Positions 40,631 through 60,604 of a stretch of DNA of 64,000 bases are shown piece by piece; within the stretch, counting starts at the first letter, position 1; every line of letters starts with the position of its first letter. This stretch comes from Ranitomeya imitator (taxonomy: Eukaryota): positions 216,752,001 through 216,816,000 of the forward strand of contig NC_091286.1 of assembly GCF_032444005.1 (NCBI RefSeq), given 5' to 3'. A program made the position numbers and the translations under genes. A model generated the notes under the pieces. The model did no database searches and had not been told where the DNA came from. It saw only the letters and a list, made by a program, of their open reading frames with translations.

Positions 40631-40963
40631 TTAGGGGGGATGAAGTTATGCACACTGAAGTTTTCAGTTATGTTGCCTTATTTGTTGTTTGCTTCACAAT
40701 AAAAAGAAAGTTGTAGGCATGTTCTTTACATGACCTGATGCAAAGCCTCAAAAATACATTGACAAGTGACATTCCAGGTTGTGATGTAGCAAAACACAAA
40801 AACTGCCAATTTCAAAGAGAAAAAAAAACTCCAAGTAAATGTGGCGCTAAGCACCTACGGATTTTTTTAATTCATCCACTTCAAGTGAAAAATGTTAAAA
40901 AATTCATTTATTTTCTCAAAATAAAAAAATAAAATATATTTGTAAATTTTTTTAAAAAAACAG

Positions 40964-41011
40964 TACAACGCGTTTCGGCTGCTATTTTTACATTGCAGCC
41001 TTCATCAGGTA
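40964..41011 (-). ncRNA. Minimal PLE-type hammerhead motif (left arm)
   Basis: UAC-CUGAUGA-A-GGCUGC...GCAGCC-GAAAC GC GUU-GUA; palindromic ACGCGU stem III. Confidence 0.7.
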
Positions 41012-42121
41012 GTAAAAAAACAAAAAGAACAAACAATACAATAAGCACTATAAAATGATGTTACAACCTCCAAGTTCTCTTATTTATGAGGGTTCCTAGA
41101 AGGGATTAGCAGGGCGGGACCGGGGATCAGGTTCTCCTTTCCTGATGACTAACTACATGGTAGCCTCTAAAGAGACACATTTATCTTATATATATAAAAG
41201 AGCAGTTTAGTACTTCTATTCTATCCAAAATGAGCTTTTAAATACATGGTATTACACTGTTACGAACAAACACATTAAAAATATAGGTATATACACAATC
41301 ATAAATATGATTCATTCCAATACCTCATCAATACCATTACTATCAATTCATCCCATAAAATACATTTAAAAAAATATGTTTTAAAAAAAAAAAAAAAAGG
41401 GAAATTTTTTTTGTTGTTGTATTGACCCATGCGCGAACGACTGAGCTATTTATGACAAACCCTTACACATTCTCTACTACATCATTAAGTCCATTTGGAT
41501 AAAGGCTTTGTAACCTATATATCCAATATGACTCCTTGCGGTTTAATAATTTGTTCCTGTTATTAGCCCCTTTTGGTATATGCTCCAGCGGTGTGACCGT
41601 AATGCAGAAGCATTTATTGTGCTTCAGCAGGAGATGACGGGACAGACTATGTTTAATCTGCCCGTTCTTTGCATTATAGCGGTGATTATTCATCCGGGCA
41701 CTCAATTCCTTGGAAGTTCATCCAACGTATTGGAGCCCGCATTTGCAAGTCACTACATAGATGACAAAATCCGTTCTACATGTGAGTCTCTGCTTAATCT
41801 TAATTGTTTCCCCAGTAGTATTAGATTGAATACTCCGAGCTCCATGGTTAATGATCTTACAACATTAACATTTGTTTGAAGAGCATCTATATATTCCTGT
41901 GTTCATCTTCCCTCCATTCACATTGGTATTGTTTCCTATCATGTTTTCTATTTTTGGAACCTCTCTTAATTTACTCTGAGCTACAATATTTTTCACTGTC
42001 GCCCCTCTCCTAAAAGTTACTCTAATTTACAGGATTCTTCCTCCGTCCCGGCCCAGAAAATGATCAAATCATCTATATATCTACGGTATAGTAATATTTT
42101 TTCTTTGTATTCTCAAAGATA

Positions 42122-43563
42122 TTGAGATCAGTAGATCATTATTTATCATCAGTATCAGGACTGCGGGAGGAACAAAAAACATTTTTGTTGGAAGGGTTGA
42201 AATTCATATTAACGCACAATATCTTTGAGTTCCAGGGTAAACTCTATTTACAGCGCCTTGGTACAGCGATGGGGACTCGGGTAGCGCCAAGTTTCGCAAA
42301 TCTCTTCATGGGACGTTTCGAGTCCTCATCGCTGTTGTATGCATCTGAATACAAAGAAAAAATATTACTATACCGTAGATATATAGATGATTTGATCATT
42401 TTCTGGGCCGGGACGGAGGAAGAAGCCTGTAAATTAATAGATTCTCTTAATAGCAATAACTGGGGCATCTCCTTTACGTCATGCATCAGAAGGGACAAAA
42501 TCGTGTTCCTGGACCTGGAATTGGGGAAGCGGGGGAAATTATAACAAAAACGCACTTCAAAAGCTGTGCTACGAATGGCTACGTGGACTTTAGAAGTGCG
42601 CATTATAAAAAATGGAAAACTAATGTACCATTCAGCCAGTTCTTAAGGATACGAAAAAACTGTACAAACACTAAAGATTATGTGACCCAATCAGCGATAC
42701 TGAAGAAAAGGTTCAGTGATAAGAAGTATCCAAAAAAATTAATCGAGGCAGCATACAGAAAGAATTTGGACAAAGTACAGGAGGATTGTCTCCCAAGTAG
42801 GAAGAGAAAAGATTGTAATGCAGAGGAAACTAGAGGGAAAGAACGGCCAGCAAGCAATGAGGAGAATAAGAGAAATCTTTGGAAGTTTAATTTTATAACA
42901 ACTTATAATAAAGGGAATGTATTGATAAGGAGAATTTTAAAAAAATATTGGTATATTTTAAAAAAAGATGTGATTCTTGGGAAAATGCTTCCAAGGGAAC
43001 AGGGAGTATCTTTTAGGAGAGGGGCGACAGTGAAAAATATTGTAGCTCAGAGTAAATTAAGAGAGGTTCCAAAAATAGAAAACATGATAGGAAACAATAC
43101 CAATGTGAATGGAGGGAAGATGAACACAGGAGTATATAGATGCTCTTCAAACAAATGTAAATGTTGTAAGATCATTAACCATGGAGCTCGGAGTATTCAA
43201 TCTAATACTACTGGGGAAACAATTAAGATTAAGCAGAGACTCACATGTAGAACGGATTTTGTCATCTATGTAGTGACTTGCAAATGCGGGCTCCAATACG
43301 TGGGACGAACTTCCCAGGAATTGAGTGCCCGGATGAATAATCACCGCTATAATGCAAAGAACGGGCAGATTAAACATAGTCTGTCCCGTCATCTCCTGCT
43401 GAAGCACAATAAATGCTTCTGCATTACGGTCACACCGCTGGAGCATATACCAAAAGGGGCTAATAACAGGAACAAATTATTAAACCGCAAGGAGTCATAT
43501 TGGATATATAGGTTACAAAGCCTTTATCCAAATGGACTTAATGATGTAGTAGAGAATGTGTAA
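42122..43563 (+). pseudogene. 5'-truncated, frameshifted Penelope RT + GIY-YIG endonuclease
   Basis: GTAMGTRVAPSFANLFM, RYIDD, FLDL; then VIYVVTCKCGLQYVGRT...RMNNHR and ESYWIYRL...GLN; two ORFs in different frames. Confidence 0.92.
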
Positions 43564-44023
43564 GGGTTTGTCATAAATAGCTCAGTCGTTCGCGCATGGG
43601 TCAATACAACAACAAAAAAAAATTCCCTTTTTTTTTTTTTTTTTTTTTAAACATATATTTTTTTAAATGTATTTTATGGGATGAATTGATAGTAATGGTA
43701 TTGATGAGGTATTGGAATGAATCATATTTATGATTGTGTATATACCTATATTTTTAATGTTGTGTTTGTTCGTAACAGTGTAATACCATGTATTTAAAAG
43801 CTCATTTTGGATAGAATAGAAGTACTAAACTGCTCTTTTATATATATAAGATAAATGTGTCTCTTTAGAGGCTACCATGTAGTTAGTCATCAGGAAAGGA
43901 GAACCTGATCCCCGGTCCCGCCCTGCTAATCCCTTCTAGGAACCCTCATAAATATGAGAACTTGGAGGTTGTAACATCATTTTATAGTGCTTATTGTATT
44001 GTTTGTTCTTTTTGTTTTTTTAC

Positions 44024-44071
44024 TACCTGATGAAGGCTGCACTGTAAAAATAGCAGCCGAAACGCGTTGTA
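44024..44071 (+). ncRNA. Minimal PLE-type hammerhead motif (right arm)
   Basis: UAC-CUGAUGA-A-GGCUGC ACUGUAAAAAUA GCAGCC-GAAAC GC GUU-GUA. Confidence 0.7.
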
Positions 44072-44542
44072 CTGTTTTTTTTAAAAAAATTTACAAATAT
44101 ATTTTATTTTTTTATTTTGAGAAAATAAATGAATTTTTTAACATTTTTCACTTGAAGTGGATGAATTCAAAAAATCTGTAGGTGCTTAGCGCCACATTTA
44201 CTTGGAGTTTTTTTTTTTCTTTGAAATCGCCACCTATGTGGATCTGAAGCAGGATCAACACATAGTTCTCCAAAGTGAGCTGCACACCTTATTGGATTAT
44301 ACAACATACGAAGAAGAGTTGCCTAATGAATTGATTCCTCGAGAATCTCAACGTCTATTTCTTACCGATAGAAGGTGAGCATAACTACAAATAAAAGAAA
44401 TGTTTTTAACTTGTTGGTAAAAACGTATTACGCTCAGAGGAAGCGCCGCACTTGTCTCTTTTTTTCCCCTCTTTCCCTAAACCAGGGTATTTCTAAAGAC
44501 AAAAACTGCCAAGGGAGGTAAATACTTTTGCAAGTCGTTATA

Positions 44543-53885: not shown

Positions 53886-55374
53886 AAGATATAGAGCATT
53901 GTTGCTCAATAAGAGTTAGCTGGGCATAGTCGCTGCAGAAATCAAGTATACGAGACAAAAATTATTTTTGCTTGATACCAGGTACAATAACGTACTCTTC
54001 CTACTAAAATGGATGATGCAGAAAGTTGAATATTTGCCATTATAATTACCGTACACATTTTTGCCTTGATTTTTAATGCTGTGTATGAGTCCAGCGGAAA
54101 AGAATGCTCCATGTTCCAAACGTTCTGCAATTTGACTGGAGCCCTTTGTGTTGCGGTTCTTGTGGGTCTTTGAGTAATTCCCAATTCTTCTGACGTCCTG
54201 AGCTTCTGTAGTGTGATTGTCAGAAGAACAGAGCTGCGGCTTGATAAGACAGACATGACTGGAATAAAAGATTCTCTCTACATGTGGAAGCATTTAATCA
54301 GGCAAGCTTCAATTATTTTTATCAAGTAAGGGAGAGAAGCAATCCCCTCTGCTCTCATAAATCTGTTTAACACTTTTCCAAGCATTCATACAGAATGCCA
54401 ATTTAGGCGTACAGGGGGAGCAGCGAACAGGCAGACATTTGGAGGCAGAGTGGATCTGAACAAGTCAGAAAACCTATCCATGTTCACCTGATAACGGAAA
54501 ACTTTATATGGAAAAATATTATCTAATTAAATAAGCGGATTCATTATGCATATGTGCCCTTGAGCGGCAGCGCCCCAGGAAATGGCACTGGTCTGAATCC
54601 CCATGTAATTAGTGAGAAAAGCTGGACTGTGTAGGAAAATATCCAGTAGTTTTGACCTCAGAAGTGTATTCTAGTCACTGTAATCACAGTTAATACCGCA
54701 GTCAGAGCACGAATATTGATTTTTGCTGAATGATGCCAGGCTTGACTGATACCCCATAATATCCATCCATTAAAATTATCGATATTGGCAACATAATTAG
54801 TAAATTAAAATTTCGCCCATACTGACATTTCCGACAAGCCAAGTGCACACCTCTTTCATTGATATTGTCATCTTGATGGAAATGGCCGTCAGATCACGGA
54901 TACATGACGGAGCGTTCGCCATTGGTGTGGAAAGTTACCTTAAACTAATAAGTGACAGCCATGATAAGCAAATGGCAGGAACACTGAAAAATGCTATCCC
55001 CAAAACCTTTCTAAAAATGTATGCAGTGTAGAGGAGGTGTCACCAGGTTTTTCCCATTTCACCACCATTCAGGCTCATGTGACAGCATTCTAACATGCTG
55101 TATATATGACTCTGGAAGGCAAAAAAAAACCCACCTTTTACAATACTCAACCAGGGGGCGGTAATGTCCAATGGGTATCGCTGGTCTTCATCCTGCACCT
55201 CCTCTCTTCTTGCGATACTGTTCTCATCTGCTTTTTACAGTACCAGCAAAAGATCTGAGATCTCAGAAATCTCATGCACAAATTTATTTATTTTTTTTCC
55301 TTACTGAGTTGGAAAACTGCTGCGCTTTTCAGAACTGCATTGCGTGACTTCTTTCAGCAATTTTTAACCTTAGA

Positions 55375-57022
55375 AAGGATCTCCTCACACCTTTCCAACT
55401 GCACATTCAGAAGCTCCCATTCCCACTCTACCTCCTCATCCCGCACTCCCTCTGTTGGATTCCTTCAAGGCTCTGTCATAGGACCCCTACTCTTCTCAAT
55501 CTATACCCTTGGCCTGGGGCAACTCATAAAGTCCCATGGCTTTCAGTACCACCTATATGCTGATGACACGCAGATCTACATCTCTGGCCCAGACATGACC
55601 TCTCTGCAGTCCAGAATCCTGGAGTGTCTTTTAGACATGTCCTCGTTCTTCTCCTCTCGCTTCCTCAAACTCAATGTGGACAAATCTGAACTCATCATCT
55701 TTCCTCCATCTCACGTATCTTTCTTATCTGATCCATCACAATAAATGACATAACGCTACTCCCCCCCCCCCCCCCTCTTCCCGGAATAGAAATCCGCGGC
55801 CTCGGAGTAAACCTTACCTCTGCCCTGTCCTTCAAACCTCTTTCCGCCTCCTGTAGACTTTAGCTCAAAAATAGTTTCTGGATCCGTTTCTGGATCCGTC
55901 CTTTCCTAACCCCTCAACCTACTAAAATGCTTGTGAATGCCATCATCATCTCCTGCCTCGACTACTGCAACATGATTTTCTGTGGCCTCCCTGCCAACAC
56001 TCTTGCACTTCTCCAGTCCATCCTTTACTCTGCTGTCCGACTAATTCATCTCTCTCCTCTCTACTCCTCAGCGTCTCCTCTTTGCAAATCTCTTCAATGG
56101 CTCCCAATTCCTCAGCATATCCATTTCAAATTACTAATACAGACCTTACTAACACTGACCTAATGATGTACAATAACAAATTATATTGTGGTACCGTGTT
56201 AGCCAGAAAAATCGATGTGAATACTTTTCTGCCCAATGATGACAAAAGTATTCTCGGAATGATATCTTTATTGGCAAACCAGAAAATAATATGTTTGCAA
56301 GCTTTCAGAGCACAGAGGCTCCTTCTTCAGGCAGACTACAATCTATTTGTAATCATGCCTGAAGAAGGAGCCTTTGTGCTCTTAAAGCTTGCAAACATAT
56401 TATTTTCTGGTTAGCCAATAAAGGTATCACTCAGAGAATACTTTTGTCATCATTGGGCAGAAAAGTATTCACATTAATACTGACCTACAAAGCCATCCAT
56501 AACATGTCTCTTCCATATAGCTCTGAACTAATCTCCCGATAGCTTTTCTCACGTAATCTCCGCTTCTCTCACGTAATCTCCGGTCCTCCTAAGACCTCTT
56601 TCTCGCCTCCACACTTATTCGTTCCTCACCCTATCACCTCCAAGACTTCTCACGAATATCCACATCCTGTGGAATTCTTTGCCCCAACACGTCCGACTAT
56701 CAACCACATATGGCTTCTTTAGATGGAACTTGAAAACCCACCTCTTCAAGAAAGCTTACAACCTGCAATGACCCTGCTGCCTCCTCACCACTACCGGAGC
56801 TACCGCTTCACCATCACCGGAGCTACTGCAACCCTCAACCTACTGTCTCCTTCCCCACCATCCTGTAGAATGTAAGCCCGCAAGGGCAGGGTCCTCACCC
56901 CTCTGTATCAGTCTGTAATTGTTAGTTTGTTTACTGTAAGTGATATCTGTAATTTGTATGTAACCCCTTCTCATGTACAGCACCATGGAATCAATGGTGC
57001 TATATAAATAAATAATAATAAT
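55375..57022 (+). mobile_element. 5'-truncated degenerate L2-clade LINE
   Basis: RT relic GFLQGSVIGPLLFSIY...HLYADDTQIY; SCLDYCN...; 3' motif TAGAATGTAAGCCCGCAAGGGCAGGGTCC; (AAT)n tail. Confidence 0.9.
56163..56474 (-). mobile_element. Fold-back mini-element with paired hammerhead-like motifs, inserted in the L2
   Basis: 119-bp inverted arms (56215-56333, 56356-56474); 13-bp TSD TAA(C/T)ACTGACCTA; tail GGTACCGTGTTAGCCAG. Confidence 0.75.
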
Positions 57023-57189: not shown

Positions 57190-57507
57190 GGCTACGTTCA
57201 GACTAGCGTTGTGCTAGTGTGCGTCGGGCGACGCAGCGGCGACGCACGCGTCATGCGCCCCTATGTTTAACATGGGGGACGCATGCGTTTTTGTTTGTTG
57301 CGTTTTGCGACGCATGCGTCTTTTTTGCCGCAAGCGTCGGACCAAGAAAACGCAACAAGTTGCATTTTTCTTGCGTCCGATTTTCGGCAAAAAACGACGC
57401 ACGCGTCGCAAAACGCAGCGTTTTTGTGTGCGTTTTGCCGCGTTTTTGCGTGCGTTGTGCGTTGCGTCGCCGACGCAGCGGCGCACAACGCTAGTCTGAA
57501 CGTAGCC
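57190..57507. mobile_element. PIF/Harbinger MITE (GGCTACGTTCA family)
   Basis: TAA TSDs; TIR GGCTACGTTCAGACTAGCG. Confidence 0.9.
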
Positions 57508-58361
57508 TAAGTGCAATCAAATATTCACCAGTCGCCATCTCAGGTGCACTGCACCACACCAGTTCTCTTTTTACTCAATTCCAACTCAATGGTTCACACT
57601 GGGGTTTAAGTCTGAGTCGGAAGTGGAGCATAAGTGGAGCAAATGTAAATATATGGAGCATCAGAAATAGGCTCCAAAAGCTTACATTGTAATAGCAATT
57701 GCCGGCTCACCCATAAACCAGTGTGATCTCTCGGGAGTCAGGCTTGCAGTCACGGTGAGGACCAGAGTGGTGCTGGTAACCCATGAAGACAAAGATTGGT
57801 GAGTATTTGATGGCACTGACAGTACACAGCACTCTACAGAAACTACAAGAAAGAGGTCTGTGAACTGCAAGTCACTCCTGAGCTACATGGTGGCTGTATA
57901 TAGTACAAAGCATTGCACATAAATAGCTTTACTGGAAGAAGTACAAACAATGAAGGGCAAATGACATTATACAGCCTAGGGCGTTTCTTGCTGTGTCAAG
58001 AAAGGGTTAAAGTTCACAAAGTTCCACCTATTATTCAAGGCAGGAAATGTGCCTGCAGAGGAAACACATTCATAAATTTTAGGGAAGGGATACGGCCTTG
58101 GCCAGCTGCTGCAAGGCTAGAAACAACATCTTCAAACCAACGAGGAGCAAGGAAGACATCCAAGAGAGATTTACCTCCTTTTTCAAGGAATCTATTTAGG
58201 CCCTGGTGCCACGTGCAAATAAACTGAATTTTTTTACCTGCTGGGTTCTTTTTGCAGGTGTGGACACTTAATACAAAATAGCAATCTGCAGGTTTTTTAA
58301 TGCGTTTTGGTGCAGATTTGAAGCAGCATTGTTGCACTGGATGTCTTAGTGATAAAACCCT

Positions 58362-58487
58362 TAGAATTGAGAGTCCTCAGTGGTTGATACCTTTTAATGG
58401 CTAACTGAAAAGATGGTAATAAATTGCAAGCTTTCGAGACTACATACGTCTACTGGCTAACACGGTACCAAGATATATTTCTTTCCT
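58362..58487 (+). mobile_element. Internally deleted hammerhead mini-element
   Basis: 13-bp TSD GTGATAAAACCCT (58349-61, 58488-500); arm start joined to tail TACTGGCTAACACGGTACC. Confidence 0.7.
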
Positions 58488-58621
58488 GTGATAAAACCCT
58501 GAGATTCTGCCCTTAAAAAAGCAACTGCCTTTATTATACACATTTTAAGTTTTTTCAAAAATTGAACAGTTCAACTGCATTATTAAGCACACAATGGGTT
58601 TGAGTTTTCTTGAAGGCACAG

Positions 58622-58746
58622 AAAAATATTTAAAATTGAGAGTCCTCAGTGGTTGATGCCTTTTAATGGCTAACTGAAAAGATGGTAACAAATTGCAAGC
58701 TTTCGAGACTACTCAGGTCTCTTCATCAGGCACAGACTAAAGACTA
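58622..58746. mobile_element. 125-bp mini-element carrying one intact hammerhead motif
   Basis: 14-bp TSD TCTTGAAGGCACAG (58608-21, 58747-60). Confidence 0.75.
58694..58732 (-). ncRNA. Minimal hammerhead motif
   Basis: UGC-CUGAUGA-A-GAGAC CUGAGUA GUCUC-GAAAG CUU-GCA; palindromic AGCU stem III. Confidence 0.65.
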
Positions 58747-58765
58747 TCTTGAAGGCACAGCTATT

Positions 58766-59240
58766 TGACCCCATGTCTTGGCTAATTTTACACTATCTCT
58801 TGGCTAATTTGATACTATCTCTTGACTAAATTGACCCCATCTCTTGGCTAATTTTACCTCATCTCTTGGCTAATTTGACCCCATCTCTTGGCTAATTTGA
58901 CACCATCTCTTGGCTATTTTTATACCATCTCTTGGCTATTTTTACATCATCTCTTGGCTAATTTTACACCATCTCTTGGCTAATTTTACACCATCTTTTG
59001 GTTAATTTTATACCATATATTGACGAATTTTACACTATAGGCAGCACGGTGGCTCAGTGGAGAGCAGCCTGATATAAAATAAAGATTATAAAAATCTATA
59101 TAAAAATTAAGATTATTATTATTGGCTAGTTTTACACCATCTCTTGGCCAATTTTACACTATCTCTTTGCTAATTTTACACCATCGTTTGGCGAGTTTGA
59201 CACCATCTCTTGGATAATTTTACACCATCTCTTGGTTGAC
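58766..59240. repeat. ~20-bp minisatellite (CATCTCTTGGCTAATTTTACAC)
   Basis: About 18 degenerate units, interrupted at ~59039-59125. Confidence 0.9.
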
Positions 59241-59888
59241 GTTTTAGACCAATTTTTTAACACACAATAAATAGGTCCAAAACTAAAGTAGCAAATTCCT
59301 AGGAATATTGGCTTTTAATCTTCTGGGATCTGGCCAGAGAGTATAAACAGTAATACAATATTCTTGGAACATAAAGATGTTCAAGATAAAATTCCCTGTG
59401 TTAATACAGTATTAGTAGAATATGATACAATCAAGGAGACAAATAGGAAGGCTATACGGCTCAATGACAACAGAACACTATCCCATTCTCCCAGAGCCAA
59501 GAAGTGGCAAACTGACAAGAGAAATATCAGATACTGGCCTCATGGAGCTGTACGGCTGATGAAATCATATACCGTATATAGAAACGAAAACCTTCATAAG
59601 CCTCCATATGATATGAAAGACATAACTGTGTCCTATGGAAATCAATGGGTGCAGTACTACCTAAAGGTTGAACAGAGCTATGATGTTCTACATTTAGTTC
59701 AAGTTATTCCTTTACTCATATGAACCCACCATTTCTAAGACAAATTATGTGCTGTATTCATAATTTTTGGACATTAACCACTACAAGAAAAATCTATACA
59801 TCTAAGCCACAAATTAACATTTTGCAATCACCTTACAAAAAGCTCTATAATCTTACTGGTGGGTCAAAAAACTTCCAATACAAACTGA

Positions 59889-60421
59889 AAAATACTACAA
59901 TTTGAGAGTCCTCAGAGGTAATATTACAATTTGAGAGTCCTCAGAGGTTGATACCTTTCAATAACTATCTGAAAAGATGGTAACAAATATCAAACTTTCA
60001 AGACTACTCAAGTCTCTTCATAAGGGCTCATACTCACTTGCGCGAAACTCGGATGATTCTCGCATGGCAATACCCGGCACTGCACCTGGCACAGAGGAGC
60101 GGAGCGTGTGTCTGCATGTATTCCTATGCGGCCGCACGCTAAGATCTGAGAGTCAGCAGCAGCGCCGGGTATTGCCGTGCGAGACTCATCCAAGTTTTGC
60201 GCAAGTGAGTATGGGCCCTTAGGCACAGTATAACACAAAATCTGTGATATAAAGTACTCGTATGCCTGATGAAGAGACTCGAGTAGCCTCGAAAGCTTGC
60301 TATTTGATACCATCTTTACAGATAGTTATTAAAAGTTATCAACCATTGAGGATTCTTAAATTTTAATATTTTTCTATCTACTGACTAACAAGGTACAAAG
60401 ATATATTTTTCATGTATCAAG
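59889..60421 (+). mobile_element. Fold-back hammerhead mini-element interrupted by a MITE
   Basis: Left arm homologous to 58630-58732; inverted right arm 60263-60365 with CUGAUGA...GAAAGCUU; tail TACTGACTAACAAGGTAC; possible 8-bp TSD ACAAACTG. Confidence 0.7.
60024..60218. mobile_element. Short PIF/Harbinger MITE
   Basis: GGGCTCATACTCACTTGCGC ... GCGCAAGTGAGTATGGGCCC; flanks TAA/TTA. Confidence 0.85.
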
Positions 60422-60604
60422 ACAAACTGGTTACAAAATGGATGTCAAGAATCCTGATGGTTCAGCTGTAGACTAGCTAGTTTTCATGATAATTATTGTC
60501 TGTTTAATCTGTCAGGAGTGCTCTAAGTCTGATCCAGCACAGTTATGTCAAATGCTACCCATCCGAAGGACAGAATTTCACTTTACACATGAAGTTGAAC
60601 TTAA

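What the first reader, a model, noticed from the sequence alone, without database searches (positions are those of the whole stretch)
56163..56474. Fold-back mini-element with face-to-face hammerheads and a 13-bp TSD
Seen: a 312-bp non-coding insert in an L2. It has 119-bp inverted arms whose inner ends each carry an HHR-like motif (CUGAAGA-A-GGAGC..GCUCU-GAAAGCUU-GCA). The minus-strand copy keeps the core; the plus-strand copy has GAAA mutated to UAAA. It has an asymmetric tail (revcomp TACTGGCTAACACGGTACC) and a 13-bp TSD. The layout (inverted duplication + HHR + tail + long TSD) copies the Penelope insertion at 40810 in miniature. Inference: a MITE-looking but RNA-mobilised non-autonomous PLE derivative in which each ribozyme is sequestered by its own antisense arm, a possible built-in cleavage switch.
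Basis: partly seen in the sequence, partly recalled or inferred. Interest (0 to 1): 0.8.

Follow-up and report, generated by a model that had tools for sequence, protein, structure and literature searches.

The report
Truncated Penelope-type hammerhead insertion, inverted pair
This 312-base hairpin-shaped insert in an old LINE is a real but ordinary dead copy of a hammerhead-carrying Penelope-type retroelement. Its mirror-image shape is the known scar of how such elements are pasted in, not a built-in ribozyme switch.

Summary
At 56163-56474 there is a 312-bp insert with 119-nt inverted arms (95% complementary). A 52-nt extension sits on the left side only. A 13-bp direct repeat (12/13) flanks the insert, which lies in a LINE that carries a reverse-transcriptase domain.

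Each arm carries a Penelope-type minimal hammerhead. The motif is 4 hits against 0.07-0.28 in shuffles and covaries between families. The right copy's UAAA is a private mutation; nearly all family copies read GAAA.

The element is RNA-mobilised and of Penelope type, possibly from a ~170-nt protein-free "retrozyme" unit. The fold-back, however, is not an inherited design:
- The centre is covered about 50-3,000 times less than the sampled arm positions in DNA contigs.
- Three of the six arm differences are private to one arm.
- Three related insertions in the same window have other junctions: none, a non-overlapping inversion, and a larger fold-back.
- The architecture (head-to-head 5'-truncated copies, a tail at one end only, long variable target duplications) is already published for Penelope-like elements.

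Each transcript holds only one sense ribozyme of a dimer-dependent type, locked in a -204 kcal/mol hairpin, so a switch is unlikely.

This scan has already reported the same class many times in this frog genome. Verdict: already known, low interest.

The parts
56135..56149 (.). Extra, degenerate third copy of the target motif (TAATACAGACCTTAC) in the left flank. Unexplained.
   Evidence: Read. LINE paralogues carry the motif once (joint 56134>56475, loose-end consensus at 56475).
56150..56162 (.). Left target-site duplication, TAACACTGACCTA.
   Evidence: family D5, 12/13 with 56475-56487.
56163..56214 (-). The 'tail': 52 nt present only on the minus-oriented copy (its 3' end). It holds the conserved 17-mer CTGGCTAACACGGTACC (56190-56206) and a small terminal hairpin.
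   Evidence: The same 17-mer is in insertion A (58453-58469) and, with 3 changes, in C (60381-60397).
56215..56333 (-). Left arm: the minus-oriented copy of the unit (hammerhead plus 84 nt downstream of the cut site).
   Evidence: pair I1; alignment.
56303..56330 (-). Minimal type I hammerhead core from CUGAAGA to GAAA. The core is intact, but 10.1-11.1 is G.U. The predicted cut lies between 56299 and 56298.
   Evidence: The features match those listed in PMC4209133.
56334..56355 (.). Centre of the fold-back: about 10 nt of sequence upstream of the hammerhead from each copy, around a 5-nt loop. It resembles the end of the tail (TTGTA.ATCAT).
   Evidence: Depth is only about 46 at 56336.
56356..56474 (+). 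Right arm: the plus-oriented copy, without a tail. It ends at ...GTATTCACAT, the proximal terminus.
   Evidence: pair I1. A contig of another copy (record 8) also stops aligning at 56473 (table 8).
56359..56386 (+). Second hammerhead core with G12 changed to U at 56383 (UAAA). This is a private, inactivating change.
   Evidence: table 3: 56383 T>G in 2422/2610 (X5) and 20423/20485 (X13) of contig depth, and in 62/62 RNA reads (X33).
56475..56487 (.). Right target-site duplication, TAATACTGACCTA, identical to the LINE paralogue consensus.
58366..58487 (.). Sister insertion A. It has a minus-oriented tail-less piece (58366-58443, 5'-truncated inside helix II) joined head-to-head to a plus-oriented piece that is only the tail (58444-58487). 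The target duplication is 17 bp (58349-58365 / 58488-58504).
58622..58746 (-). Sister insertion B. A single tail-less copy with an intact hammerhead (58729-58701). The target duplication is 14 bp (58608-58621 / 58747-58760).
59888..60417 (.). Sister insertion C. A larger head-to-head fold-back with a tail-less left copy (-) and a right copy (+) that carries the tail. The target duplication is 12 bp (59876-59887 / 60418-60429).

Best explanation
The insert is one old, dead-on-arrival integration event made by the machinery of a Penelope-like element (PLE). The template was the hammerhead-bearing terminal module of a high-copy family, most likely a protein-free unit of about 170 nt (a 'non-LTR retrozyme'-type PLE parasite).

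Inferred steps, in order:
1. The PLE endonuclease cut both target strands about 13 bp apart.
2. DNA synthesis was primed at both ends. On the left it started at the distal start site of the RNA, so the 52-nt tail is included. On the right it started at the proximal start site, so the tail is absent.
3. Both copies ran back through the hammerhead to about 10 nt upstream of it.
4. They were joined head-to-head at a small palindrome.

Self-priming of a single cDNA is the alternative way to get the same joint.

The 'face-to-face hammerheads' are therefore two 5'-truncated copies of one module, and the hairpin is a scar of integration. Since then each arm has picked up private mutations, including G12U in the right ribozyme.

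Shown: the anatomy, the family-level conservation of G12, the low depth at the centre, and the variable junctions in sister insertions. Inferred: the order of enzymatic steps and the identity of the template RNA.
For: 1. Anatomy.
2. The hammerhead matches every feature listed for PLE minimal hammerheads (PMC4209133):
   - an extra nucleotide between A9 and 10.1;
   - a helix II of 5-6 bp that covaries between families (GGAGC/GCUCU, GAGAC/GUCUC, GGCUGC/GCAGCC);
   - palindromic 15.x-16.x (AGCU or ACGCGU);
   - a short helix I that also covaries (UGC/GCA against UAC/GUA).
   It is enriched 15-57 fold over shuffles.
3. Published PLE signature:
   - high 5' truncation, an adjacent inverted 5'-truncated copy, and a 30-40-bp tail at one end only (PMC8557442);
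   - inverted pLTRs with a tail on one of them, target duplications, and palindromes at head-to-head junctions (PMC3846280);
   - a purified PLE protein that cleaves and extends both strands and starts reverse transcription at two internal sites, with the tail lying between them. One start site lies 85-92 nt past the hammerhead cut (PMC11167929). Here the proximal end lies 84 nt past the cut.
4. All three head-to-head insertions of this family pair in the window (E, A, C) have their 3' ends outward, with one end carrying the tail and the other lacking it. The unrelated Penelope copy at 40810-44494 has the same outward head-to-head layout with an extension at one end only. Tail-less and tailed ends both recur across the sister family, next to heterogeneous AT-rich flanks (loose ends at 58361, 58487-58489, 58620).
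5. The fold-back is not inherited. Depth at 56336 is about 46, against 2,610 to 157,977 at the sampled arm positions and 13.4 for unique DNA. Positions 56259, 56265 and 56383 are private to one arm. Sister insertions have other junctions.
6. The tail end TTGTACATCAT recurs as TTGTAATCAT directly 5' of GCC-CUGAAGA. This suggests a tandem or circular ~170-nt template, within the 170-400-nt range of animal retrozymes (PMC7229834; bioRxiv 10.64898/2026.07.22.740005).
Against: - No autonomous PLE sharing the arm or the tail was found. The only RT-bearing Penelope in the window (40810-44494) shares the ribozyme architecture but not the sequence.
- The tail is 52 nt, longer than the published 30-40 bp.
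- The near-perfect symmetry of the centre (5-nt loop) is not predicted by two independent cDNAs, unless both stop or pair at the same palindromic site. Self-priming would explain it more simply.
- The ~170-nt unit rests on an 11-nt similarity found post hoc.
- Contig depths are summed assembler depths and are not copy numbers.
- The third copy of the target motif at 56135-56149 is unexplained.
- No Rfam hammerhead model scores.
Confidence: 0.8

Rival explanations
1. One reading: the fold-back is the transmissible unit of a MITE-like, RNA-mobilised mini-element. Each ribozyme is held inactive by its antisense arm, which works as a conformational cleavage switch.
For: - The hairpin is extremely stable.
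- Both arms carry the motif at their inner ends.
- A few contigs (about 3-6 unique-depth equivalents) cover the centre in two species (position 56336).
Against: - Centre depth is about 50-3,000 times lower than the depth at sampled arm positions.
- The arm differences that could be checked are private changes from the family majority.
- Sister insertions A, B and C differ in their junctions.
- Each transcript holds one sense and one antisense hammerhead, the antisense is transcribed first, and this ribozyme type needs two sense copies (PMC4209133).
- The hammerhead fold is worth -10.8 kcal/mol against -204 kcal/mol for the hairpin.
- The right copy has the lethal G12U change and the left copy a G.U at 10.1-11.1.
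- A hairpin RNA would also lack a second tail for priming.
Confidence: 0.06
2. Same PLE-type event, but the mirror image arose by self-priming. A single cDNA started at the distal site, folded back on a small palindrome about 10 nt upstream of the hammerhead and copied itself. The copy was then resolved 52 nt short of the end.
For: - The symmetry reaches a 5-nt loop.
- Arkhipova et al. 2013 infer self-priming from palindromes at PLE inverted junctions (PMC3846280).
Against: - The inverted arm stops at what looks like a regular proximal terminus. Another copy ends at 56473, and the sister family has recurrent tail-less ends. Under fold-back copying this would be a coincidence.
- Insertion A has non-overlapping inverted pieces, which self-copying cannot make.
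- Both-strand extension has been shown in vitro (PMC11167929).
Confidence: 0.3
3. A DNA-transposon MITE or a generic palindromic duplication, in which the hammerhead-like motif is a chance match.
For: It has a hairpin shape and a flanking direct repeat. No Rfam hammerhead hit was found.
Against: - The inverted repeat does not reach the left end, where 52 nt are unpaired.
- The duplication is long, and it varies among relatives (12-18 bp).
- Family members are 5'-truncated single copies (B).
- The motif is enriched and covaries.
- G12 is conserved in the family majority.
Confidence: 0.02

Closest known systems
Penelope-like element insertions with inverted 5'-truncated pLTR copies and a one-sided 'tail' (Arkhipova et al. 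2013, PMC3846280; Craig et al. 2021, PMC8557442; Frangieh et al. 2024, PMC11167929)
   Same: - Head-to-head inverted copies with a small palindrome at the joint.
- An extension at one outer end only.
- A target duplication of variable length.
- A hammerhead inside the repeated module.
- The proximal end lies about 84 nt downstream of the ribozyme cut site, against 85-92 nt in the anole element.
   Different: - There is no ORF or internal region at all: only 170 + 118 nt of the terminal module plus about 10 nt upstream in each copy.
- The tail is 52 nt rather than 30-40 bp.
- No matching autonomous element was identified.
Animal non-LTR retrozymes (Cervera & de la Pena 2020, PMC7229834; Li, Clavereau & Pollet 2026, bioRxiv 10.64898/2026.07.22.740005)
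   Same: - A protein-free, high-copy repeat with a type I hammerhead that needs dimerisation.
- An inferred unit of about 170 nt, within the published 170-400 nt range (51-972 bp in the 2026 survey).
- Target duplications longer than 4 bp.
- Monomeric dispersed copies are common.
- The class has been proposed to derive from PLE pLTRs.
   Different: - There is no tandem array at this locus. The tandem or circular nature of the template is inferred only from an 11-nt match.
- The hammerhead is the minimal PLE form (no loop 3, 3-bp helix I) rather than the canonical amphibian satellite-2 type.
PLE minimal hammerhead ribozymes (Cervera & de la Pena 2014, PMC4209133)
   Same: - CUGANGA.
- A bulged nucleotide before helix II.
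- A 5-6-bp covarying helix II.
- GAAA.
- A palindromic 15.x-16.x and a short helix I.
- Thousands of dispersed copies in an amphibian genome.
   Different: This locus has G.U instead of the highly conserved G10.1-C11.1 pair in both copies, and G12U in one copy. Activity was not tested.
L1 twin-priming inversions
   Same: Works alike: a second priming event on the other nicked strand gives an inverted 5' part and a direct 3' part within one target duplication. Insertion A looks exactly like this.
   Different: It involves a different enzyme family. In the element studied here the two parts overlap by about 128 nt instead of being adjacent segments of one RNA.

Membership tests
Penelope-like element insertion (PLE-mobilised DNA) | Minimal type I hammerhead in the repeated terminal module | tested here: met
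   The features are as listed in PMC4209133.
Penelope-like element insertion (PLE-mobilised DNA) | Adjacent inverted 5'-truncated copy, arranged head-to-head | tested here: met
   pair I1. The hammerhead orientations put both 3' ends outward.
Penelope-like element insertion (PLE-mobilised DNA) | [quoted passage not shown] | tested here: met
   56163-56214, 52 nt, on the left only. This is longer than the published 30-40 bp.
Penelope-like element insertion (PLE-mobilised DNA) | Target-site duplication, variable in length between insertions | tested here: met
   13 bp here. In the same window the other insertions have 17, 14, 12 and 18 bp.
Penelope-like element insertion (PLE-mobilised DNA) | RT plus GIY-YIG ORF, or sequence identity of the module to the pLTR of an autonomous PLE | tested here: not met
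   There is no ORF in the insert. The window's RT-bearing Penelope (40810-44494; weak RVT_1) shows no sequence similarity. A genome-wide test is not possible with these tools.
Non-LTR retrozyme | Tandem (or circular-RNA) units of about 170-400 nt, each with a type I hammerhead | tested here: inconclusive
   There is no array here. The tail end TTGTACATCAT recurs directly 5' of the hammerhead in both copies, which implies a 170-nt unit (local-alignment shuffle test 81/5000).
Non-LTR retrozyme | No coding capacity and high copy number | tested here: met
   The insert has no RT or endonuclease ORF. The only ORFs of at least 70 aa that touch it start in the host LINE (55927-56163 and 56082-56414). 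Summed contig depth in the arms is 10^2-10^4 times that of single-copy DNA; depth is not a strict copy number.
Non-LTR retrozyme | Expressed as linear and circular RNAs cut at the ribozyme site | not testable with these tools
   PolyA RNA reads of a related species cover the family on both strands, but no read ends cluster at 56298/56299 or 56390/56391 (table 6).
Catalytically competent hammerhead ribozyme | Conserved core (C3-A9, G12-A14, H17) | tested here: met
   Met for the left (minus-strand) copy. Not met for the right copy, which has G12U at 56383.
Catalytically competent hammerhead ribozyme | G10.1-C11.1 pair and a stable helix III | tested here: not met
   Both copies have G.U at 10.1-11.1. 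Helix III exists only as an intermolecular AGCU:AGCU duplex, and each fold-back transcript has one sense copy.
Catalytically competent hammerhead ribozyme | Match to a curated hammerhead covariance model | tested here: not met
   No Rfam hammerhead family matches at E <= 10. Minimal PLE hammerheads lack the loops on which those models rest.
MITE / DNA transposon | Terminal inverted repeats reaching both ends, with a fixed short target duplication | tested here: not met
   The left 52 nt are unpaired. Duplications are 12-18 bp and variable. Relatives are single 5'-truncated copies.

The most novel reading that the evidence does not exclude
Fold-back insertions of this kind, sitting inside transcribed LINEs, might act as ready-made long-hairpin RNA genes. 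Their roughly 128-bp double-stranded stem would feed small-RNA silencing of the whole hammerhead/PLE family. The integration scar would then become the host's trigger against the element. My evidence does not exclude this: family RNA from both strands exists. But nothing here shows transcription of this locus or any small RNAs.
Probability: 0.12. Interest if true: 0.4.

Novelty: already known. Interest (0 to 1): 0.15.

Why it matters
It matters little as a discovery. The class, its ribozyme, its inverted/tail/target-duplication signature and its abundance in amphibians are all published, and this scan has already reported the same class many times in this genome.

It has modest value as an illustration. 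Within 4.3 kb, four insertions of two sister families show every outcome of one integration mechanism: a single copy, a twin-priming-like inversion, a small fold-back and a large fold-back. In each head-to-head pair, one end carries the tail and the other lacks it. That is the genomic pattern expected from the in-vitro finding that a PLE protein extends both target strands from two RNA start sites.

It also warns annotators that such hairpins score strongly against plant miRNA-precursor models in Rfam (E = 7.6e-28, below the gathering score) without being miRNA genes.

Tried and rejected
- Rfam at gathering thresholds over the whole window, and at E <= 10 over 56000-56650: no hammerhead family. 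The only hits were generic long-hairpin miRNA models below their gathering scores. I rejected these as structural look-alikes.
- BLASTn of the element against the window to link it with the Penelope at 40810: no similarity beyond 14-16-nt chance matches.
- A search for LINE paralogues spanning the empty site inside the window: none. The public contigs supplied the empty-site evidence instead.
- Exact-pattern scans of metagenome and viral contig collections for the module (GAAAGCTTGCAA...CTGGCTAACA): 0 hits, as expected for frog DNA.
- The search of earlier findings by sequence: blank.
- RNA read ends at the predicted cleavage sites: none. The only cluster is 7 starts at 56293, which does not fit.
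- The MAFFT alignment of the seven hammerheads misaligned the Penelope copies, so I parsed the motif by pattern instead and did not run the count of structure pairs.
- I considered that the left copy is exactly one unit long. I rejected this because both copies extend about 10 nt into the preceding unit.

Full report
**What is there.**
- Window 56163-56474 is a 312-bp insert. Its arms 56215-56333 and 56356-56474 are 119 nt long, 95% complementary and 22 nt apart.
- The left side carries 52 extra bases (56163-56214) that have no partner on the right.
- The insert is flanked by TAACACTGACCTA and TAATACTGACCTA, a 12/13 match.
- As RNA, either strand folds into one long hairpin of -204 kcal/mol. 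Shuffles give -64.6 +/- 4.9, so z = -28.6. The stem continues through the 'spacer' down to a 5-nt loop.
- The host sequence is a LINE. It has a reverse-transcriptase ORF at 55274-55744 (RVT_1, E = 1.4e-12). Its 3' end lies near 57022, where hundreds of public contigs diverge.
- Public contigs and RNA reads from paralogous LINE copies run straight across the site without the insert (joints 56134>56475 and 56106>56476; loose-end consensus at 56475). Contigs of other family copies begin to align at 56163-56166 and stop at 56473. The boundaries are therefore real and the insert is a mobile unit.

**The hammerhead motif.** No Rfam hammerhead model matches, even at E <= 10. The motif nevertheless fits, feature by feature, the minimal hammerhead that Cervera and de la Pena described in Penelope-like elements (PMC4209133):
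- CUGANGA;
- an extra nucleotide before helix II;
- a 5-6-bp helix II;
- GAA;
- a palindromic 15.x-16.x stretch that can only pair between two RNA copies;
- U17 and a short helix I.

A pattern search finds four intact motifs in the window, against 0.275 (loose) or 0.07 (strict) expected from 200 dinucleotide shuffles. All four lie in TSD-bounded insertions. Across seven copies:
- helix II covaries (GGAGC/GCUCU, GAGAC/GUCUC, GGCUGC/GCAGCC);
- helix I covaries (UGC/GCA against UAC/GUA);
- the palindrome changes from AGCU to ACGCGU.

The right-hand copy reads UAAA. At that base (56383), 2422/2610 and 20423/20485 of DNA contig depth in two species, and 62/62 RNA reads, have G. The core is therefore conserved in the family, and the U is a private, inactivating change.

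**Relatives in the window.** BLAST and an nhmmer profile found three more insertions of a sister family, about 70-75% alike.

| Insertion | Coordinates | TSD | Layout |
|---|---|---|---|
| A | 58366-58487 | 17 bp | A tail-less piece truncated inside helix II, joined head-to-head to a piece that is only the tail |
| B | 58622-58746 | 14 bp | A single tail-less copy with an intact hammerhead |
| C | 59888-60417 | 12 bp | A larger head-to-head fold-back, tail on the right copy only |

- The 17-mer CTGGCTAACACGGTACC in the tail is identical in the studied element and in A, although the bodies have diverged.
- For the sister family, loose ends of public contigs show that most copies run from the body into the tail (consensus at 58620 and 58449). 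Both the tail-less end and the tail end abut heterogeneous AT-rich flanks (58361, 58487-58489). There are therefore two alternative 3' termini.
- The RT-bearing Penelope at 40810-44494 (18-bp TSD, arms of over 1 kb, weak RVT_1) has the same head-to-head layout. It shares no sequence with this element apart from the ribozyme architecture.

**Is the fold-back inherited or made at insertion?** Four observations point to 'made at insertion'.
1. Depth at the centre (56336) is about 46 in the run that matches the window's species. Unique DNA there is 13.4, and the sampled arm positions read 2,610 (56383), 4,608 (56259) and 157,977 (56315). These are summed assembler depths, not copy numbers, but the drop is about 50-3,000 fold over roughly 20-80 nt.
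2. Of the six differences between the arms, the three that the read table resolves (56259, 56265, 56383) are private departures of one arm from the family majority. This is expected if both arms were copied from one consensus-like template and then decayed.
3. A, B and C have different junctions or none.
4. The literature describes this layout as typical of PLE integration. It reports strong 5' truncation, an adjacent inverted 5'-truncated copy and a 30-40-bp tail at one end (PMC8557442). It reports inverted pLTRs with a tail on one, TSDs, and palindromes at head-to-head junctions (PMC3846280). A purified anole PLE protein cleaves and extends both target strands and starts reverse transcription at two internal RNA sites, and the tail is the stretch between them. 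One of those sites lies 85-92 nt past the hammerhead cut (PMC11167929). Here the tail-less end lies 84 nt past the predicted cut.

**Mechanism proposed.**
1. Staggered cuts are made about 13 bp apart.
2. Priming occurs on both strands, from the distal start site on the left (tail included) and from the proximal start site on the right.
3. Both cDNAs run back through the hammerhead to about 10 nt upstream of it.
4. The two are joined at a small palindrome.

I favour this (about 0.55) over self-priming of one cDNA (about 0.3). The inverted arm ends at a recurrent terminus, and insertion A cannot be made by self-copying. On the other hand, the near-perfect symmetry of the centre fits self-priming better. 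These steps are inferred, not shown.

**What was the template?** The last 11 nt of the tail (TTGTACATCAT) recur as TTGTAATCAT, and less well as TTGTAGTCT, directly 5' of GCC-CUGAAGA in the two copies (local-alignment shuffle test 81/5000). This suggests a template in which the tail end is followed by the next hammerhead. That would be a tandem or circular unit of about 170 nt, which is the definition of an animal non-LTR retrozyme (170-400 nt, PMC7229834). Retrozymes were recently argued to be non-autonomous derivatives of PLE pLTRs, with Xenopus as the worked example (bioRxiv 10.64898/2026.07.22.740005). I put this at about 0.55-0.6. The alternative is the 3' end of an autonomous PLE that I could not find.

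**The 'switch'.** Because the copies are head-to-head, each transcript contains one antisense copy followed by one sense copy. The complement of the ribozyme is thus already present when the ribozyme is made, and only one sense hammerhead is available for a motif that needs two. The hammerhead fold is worth about -11 kcal/mol against -204 kcal/mol for the hairpin. The left ribozyme has G.U in place of the highly conserved G10.1-C11.1 pair, and the right one has G12U. No RNA ends cluster at the predicted cut sites, as was also reported for the anole element. A regulated switch is therefore unlikely, although it has not been disproved experimentally.

**Comparison and verdict.**
- The element works like, and by its anatomy is, a PLE-mobilised insertion. 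Membership in 'PLE' in the strict sense (RT/GIY-YIG, or identity to an autonomous pLTR) was not met in this window and cannot be tested genome-wide here.
- Earlier notes of this scan call the genome a poison frog. They list some 520 hammerhead-related notes, including followed-up fold-back retrozyme insertions with a 13-base TSD. I did not verify the species.
- The kind is already known, and the specific claim of a designed fold-back switch is not supported.
- Unexplained leftovers: the third degenerate copy of the target motif at 56135-56149, and the 52-nt length of the tail.

Noticed in passing
window 59888-60417: A fourth hammerhead-bearing insertion (C), which the finding does not mention. 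It has a 12-bp TSD (59876-59887 / 60418-60429) and head-to-head copies (arms 59920-60025 / 60265-60370, 86% complementary). It also has a nested inverted repeat (60014-60088 / 60154-60228) around a GC-rich centre, a 29-bp tandem duplication at 59891-59948, and a tail on the right copy only.
   Followed up: partly
window 56135-56162 and 56475-56487: The target motif TAATACTGACCTA is present three times at this insertion: a degenerate 15-nt copy and a 13-nt copy on the left, and one copy on the right. LINE paralogues have it once. It may be a double target duplication or a local slippage event.
   Followed up: partly
window 57190-57507: Summed contig depth is about 830,000-850,000 in the run that matches the window's species (X5). 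In a related species (X13) it falls from about 1,100 in the first bin to about 1 in the last, and there are no polyA RNA reads. This looks like a species-specific very-high-copy repeat or satellite.
   Followed up: no
window 58741-58982: A 22-bp tandem repeat array (about 11 units, ...ATCTCTTGGCTAATTT...) lies directly next to insertion B.
   Followed up: no
window 56190-56206 (-), 58453-58469 (+), 60381-60397 (+): The 17-mer CTGGCTAACACGGTACC inside the tail is identical in two sister families whose bodies are only about 70-75% alike. It is a candidate protein-recognition or RT-initiation signal of the mobilising PLE.
   Followed up: partly
window 40792-44512: An RT-bearing Penelope insertion with an 18-bp TSD (40792-40809 / 44495-44512). 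It has head-to-head arms of over 1 kb, a second 90-nt inversion (42023-42112 / 42347-42436) and a right-only extension of about 262 nt (44233-44494), much longer than the usual tail. Only a weak RVT_1 hit remains (E = 1e-4).
   Followed up: partly
window 56221-56468: The hairpin scores E = 7.6e-28 against the Rfam plant miRNA-precursor model MIR2646 (121 bits, gathering score 245). This is a pure long-hairpin artefact and a trap for automatic annotation.
   Followed up: yes
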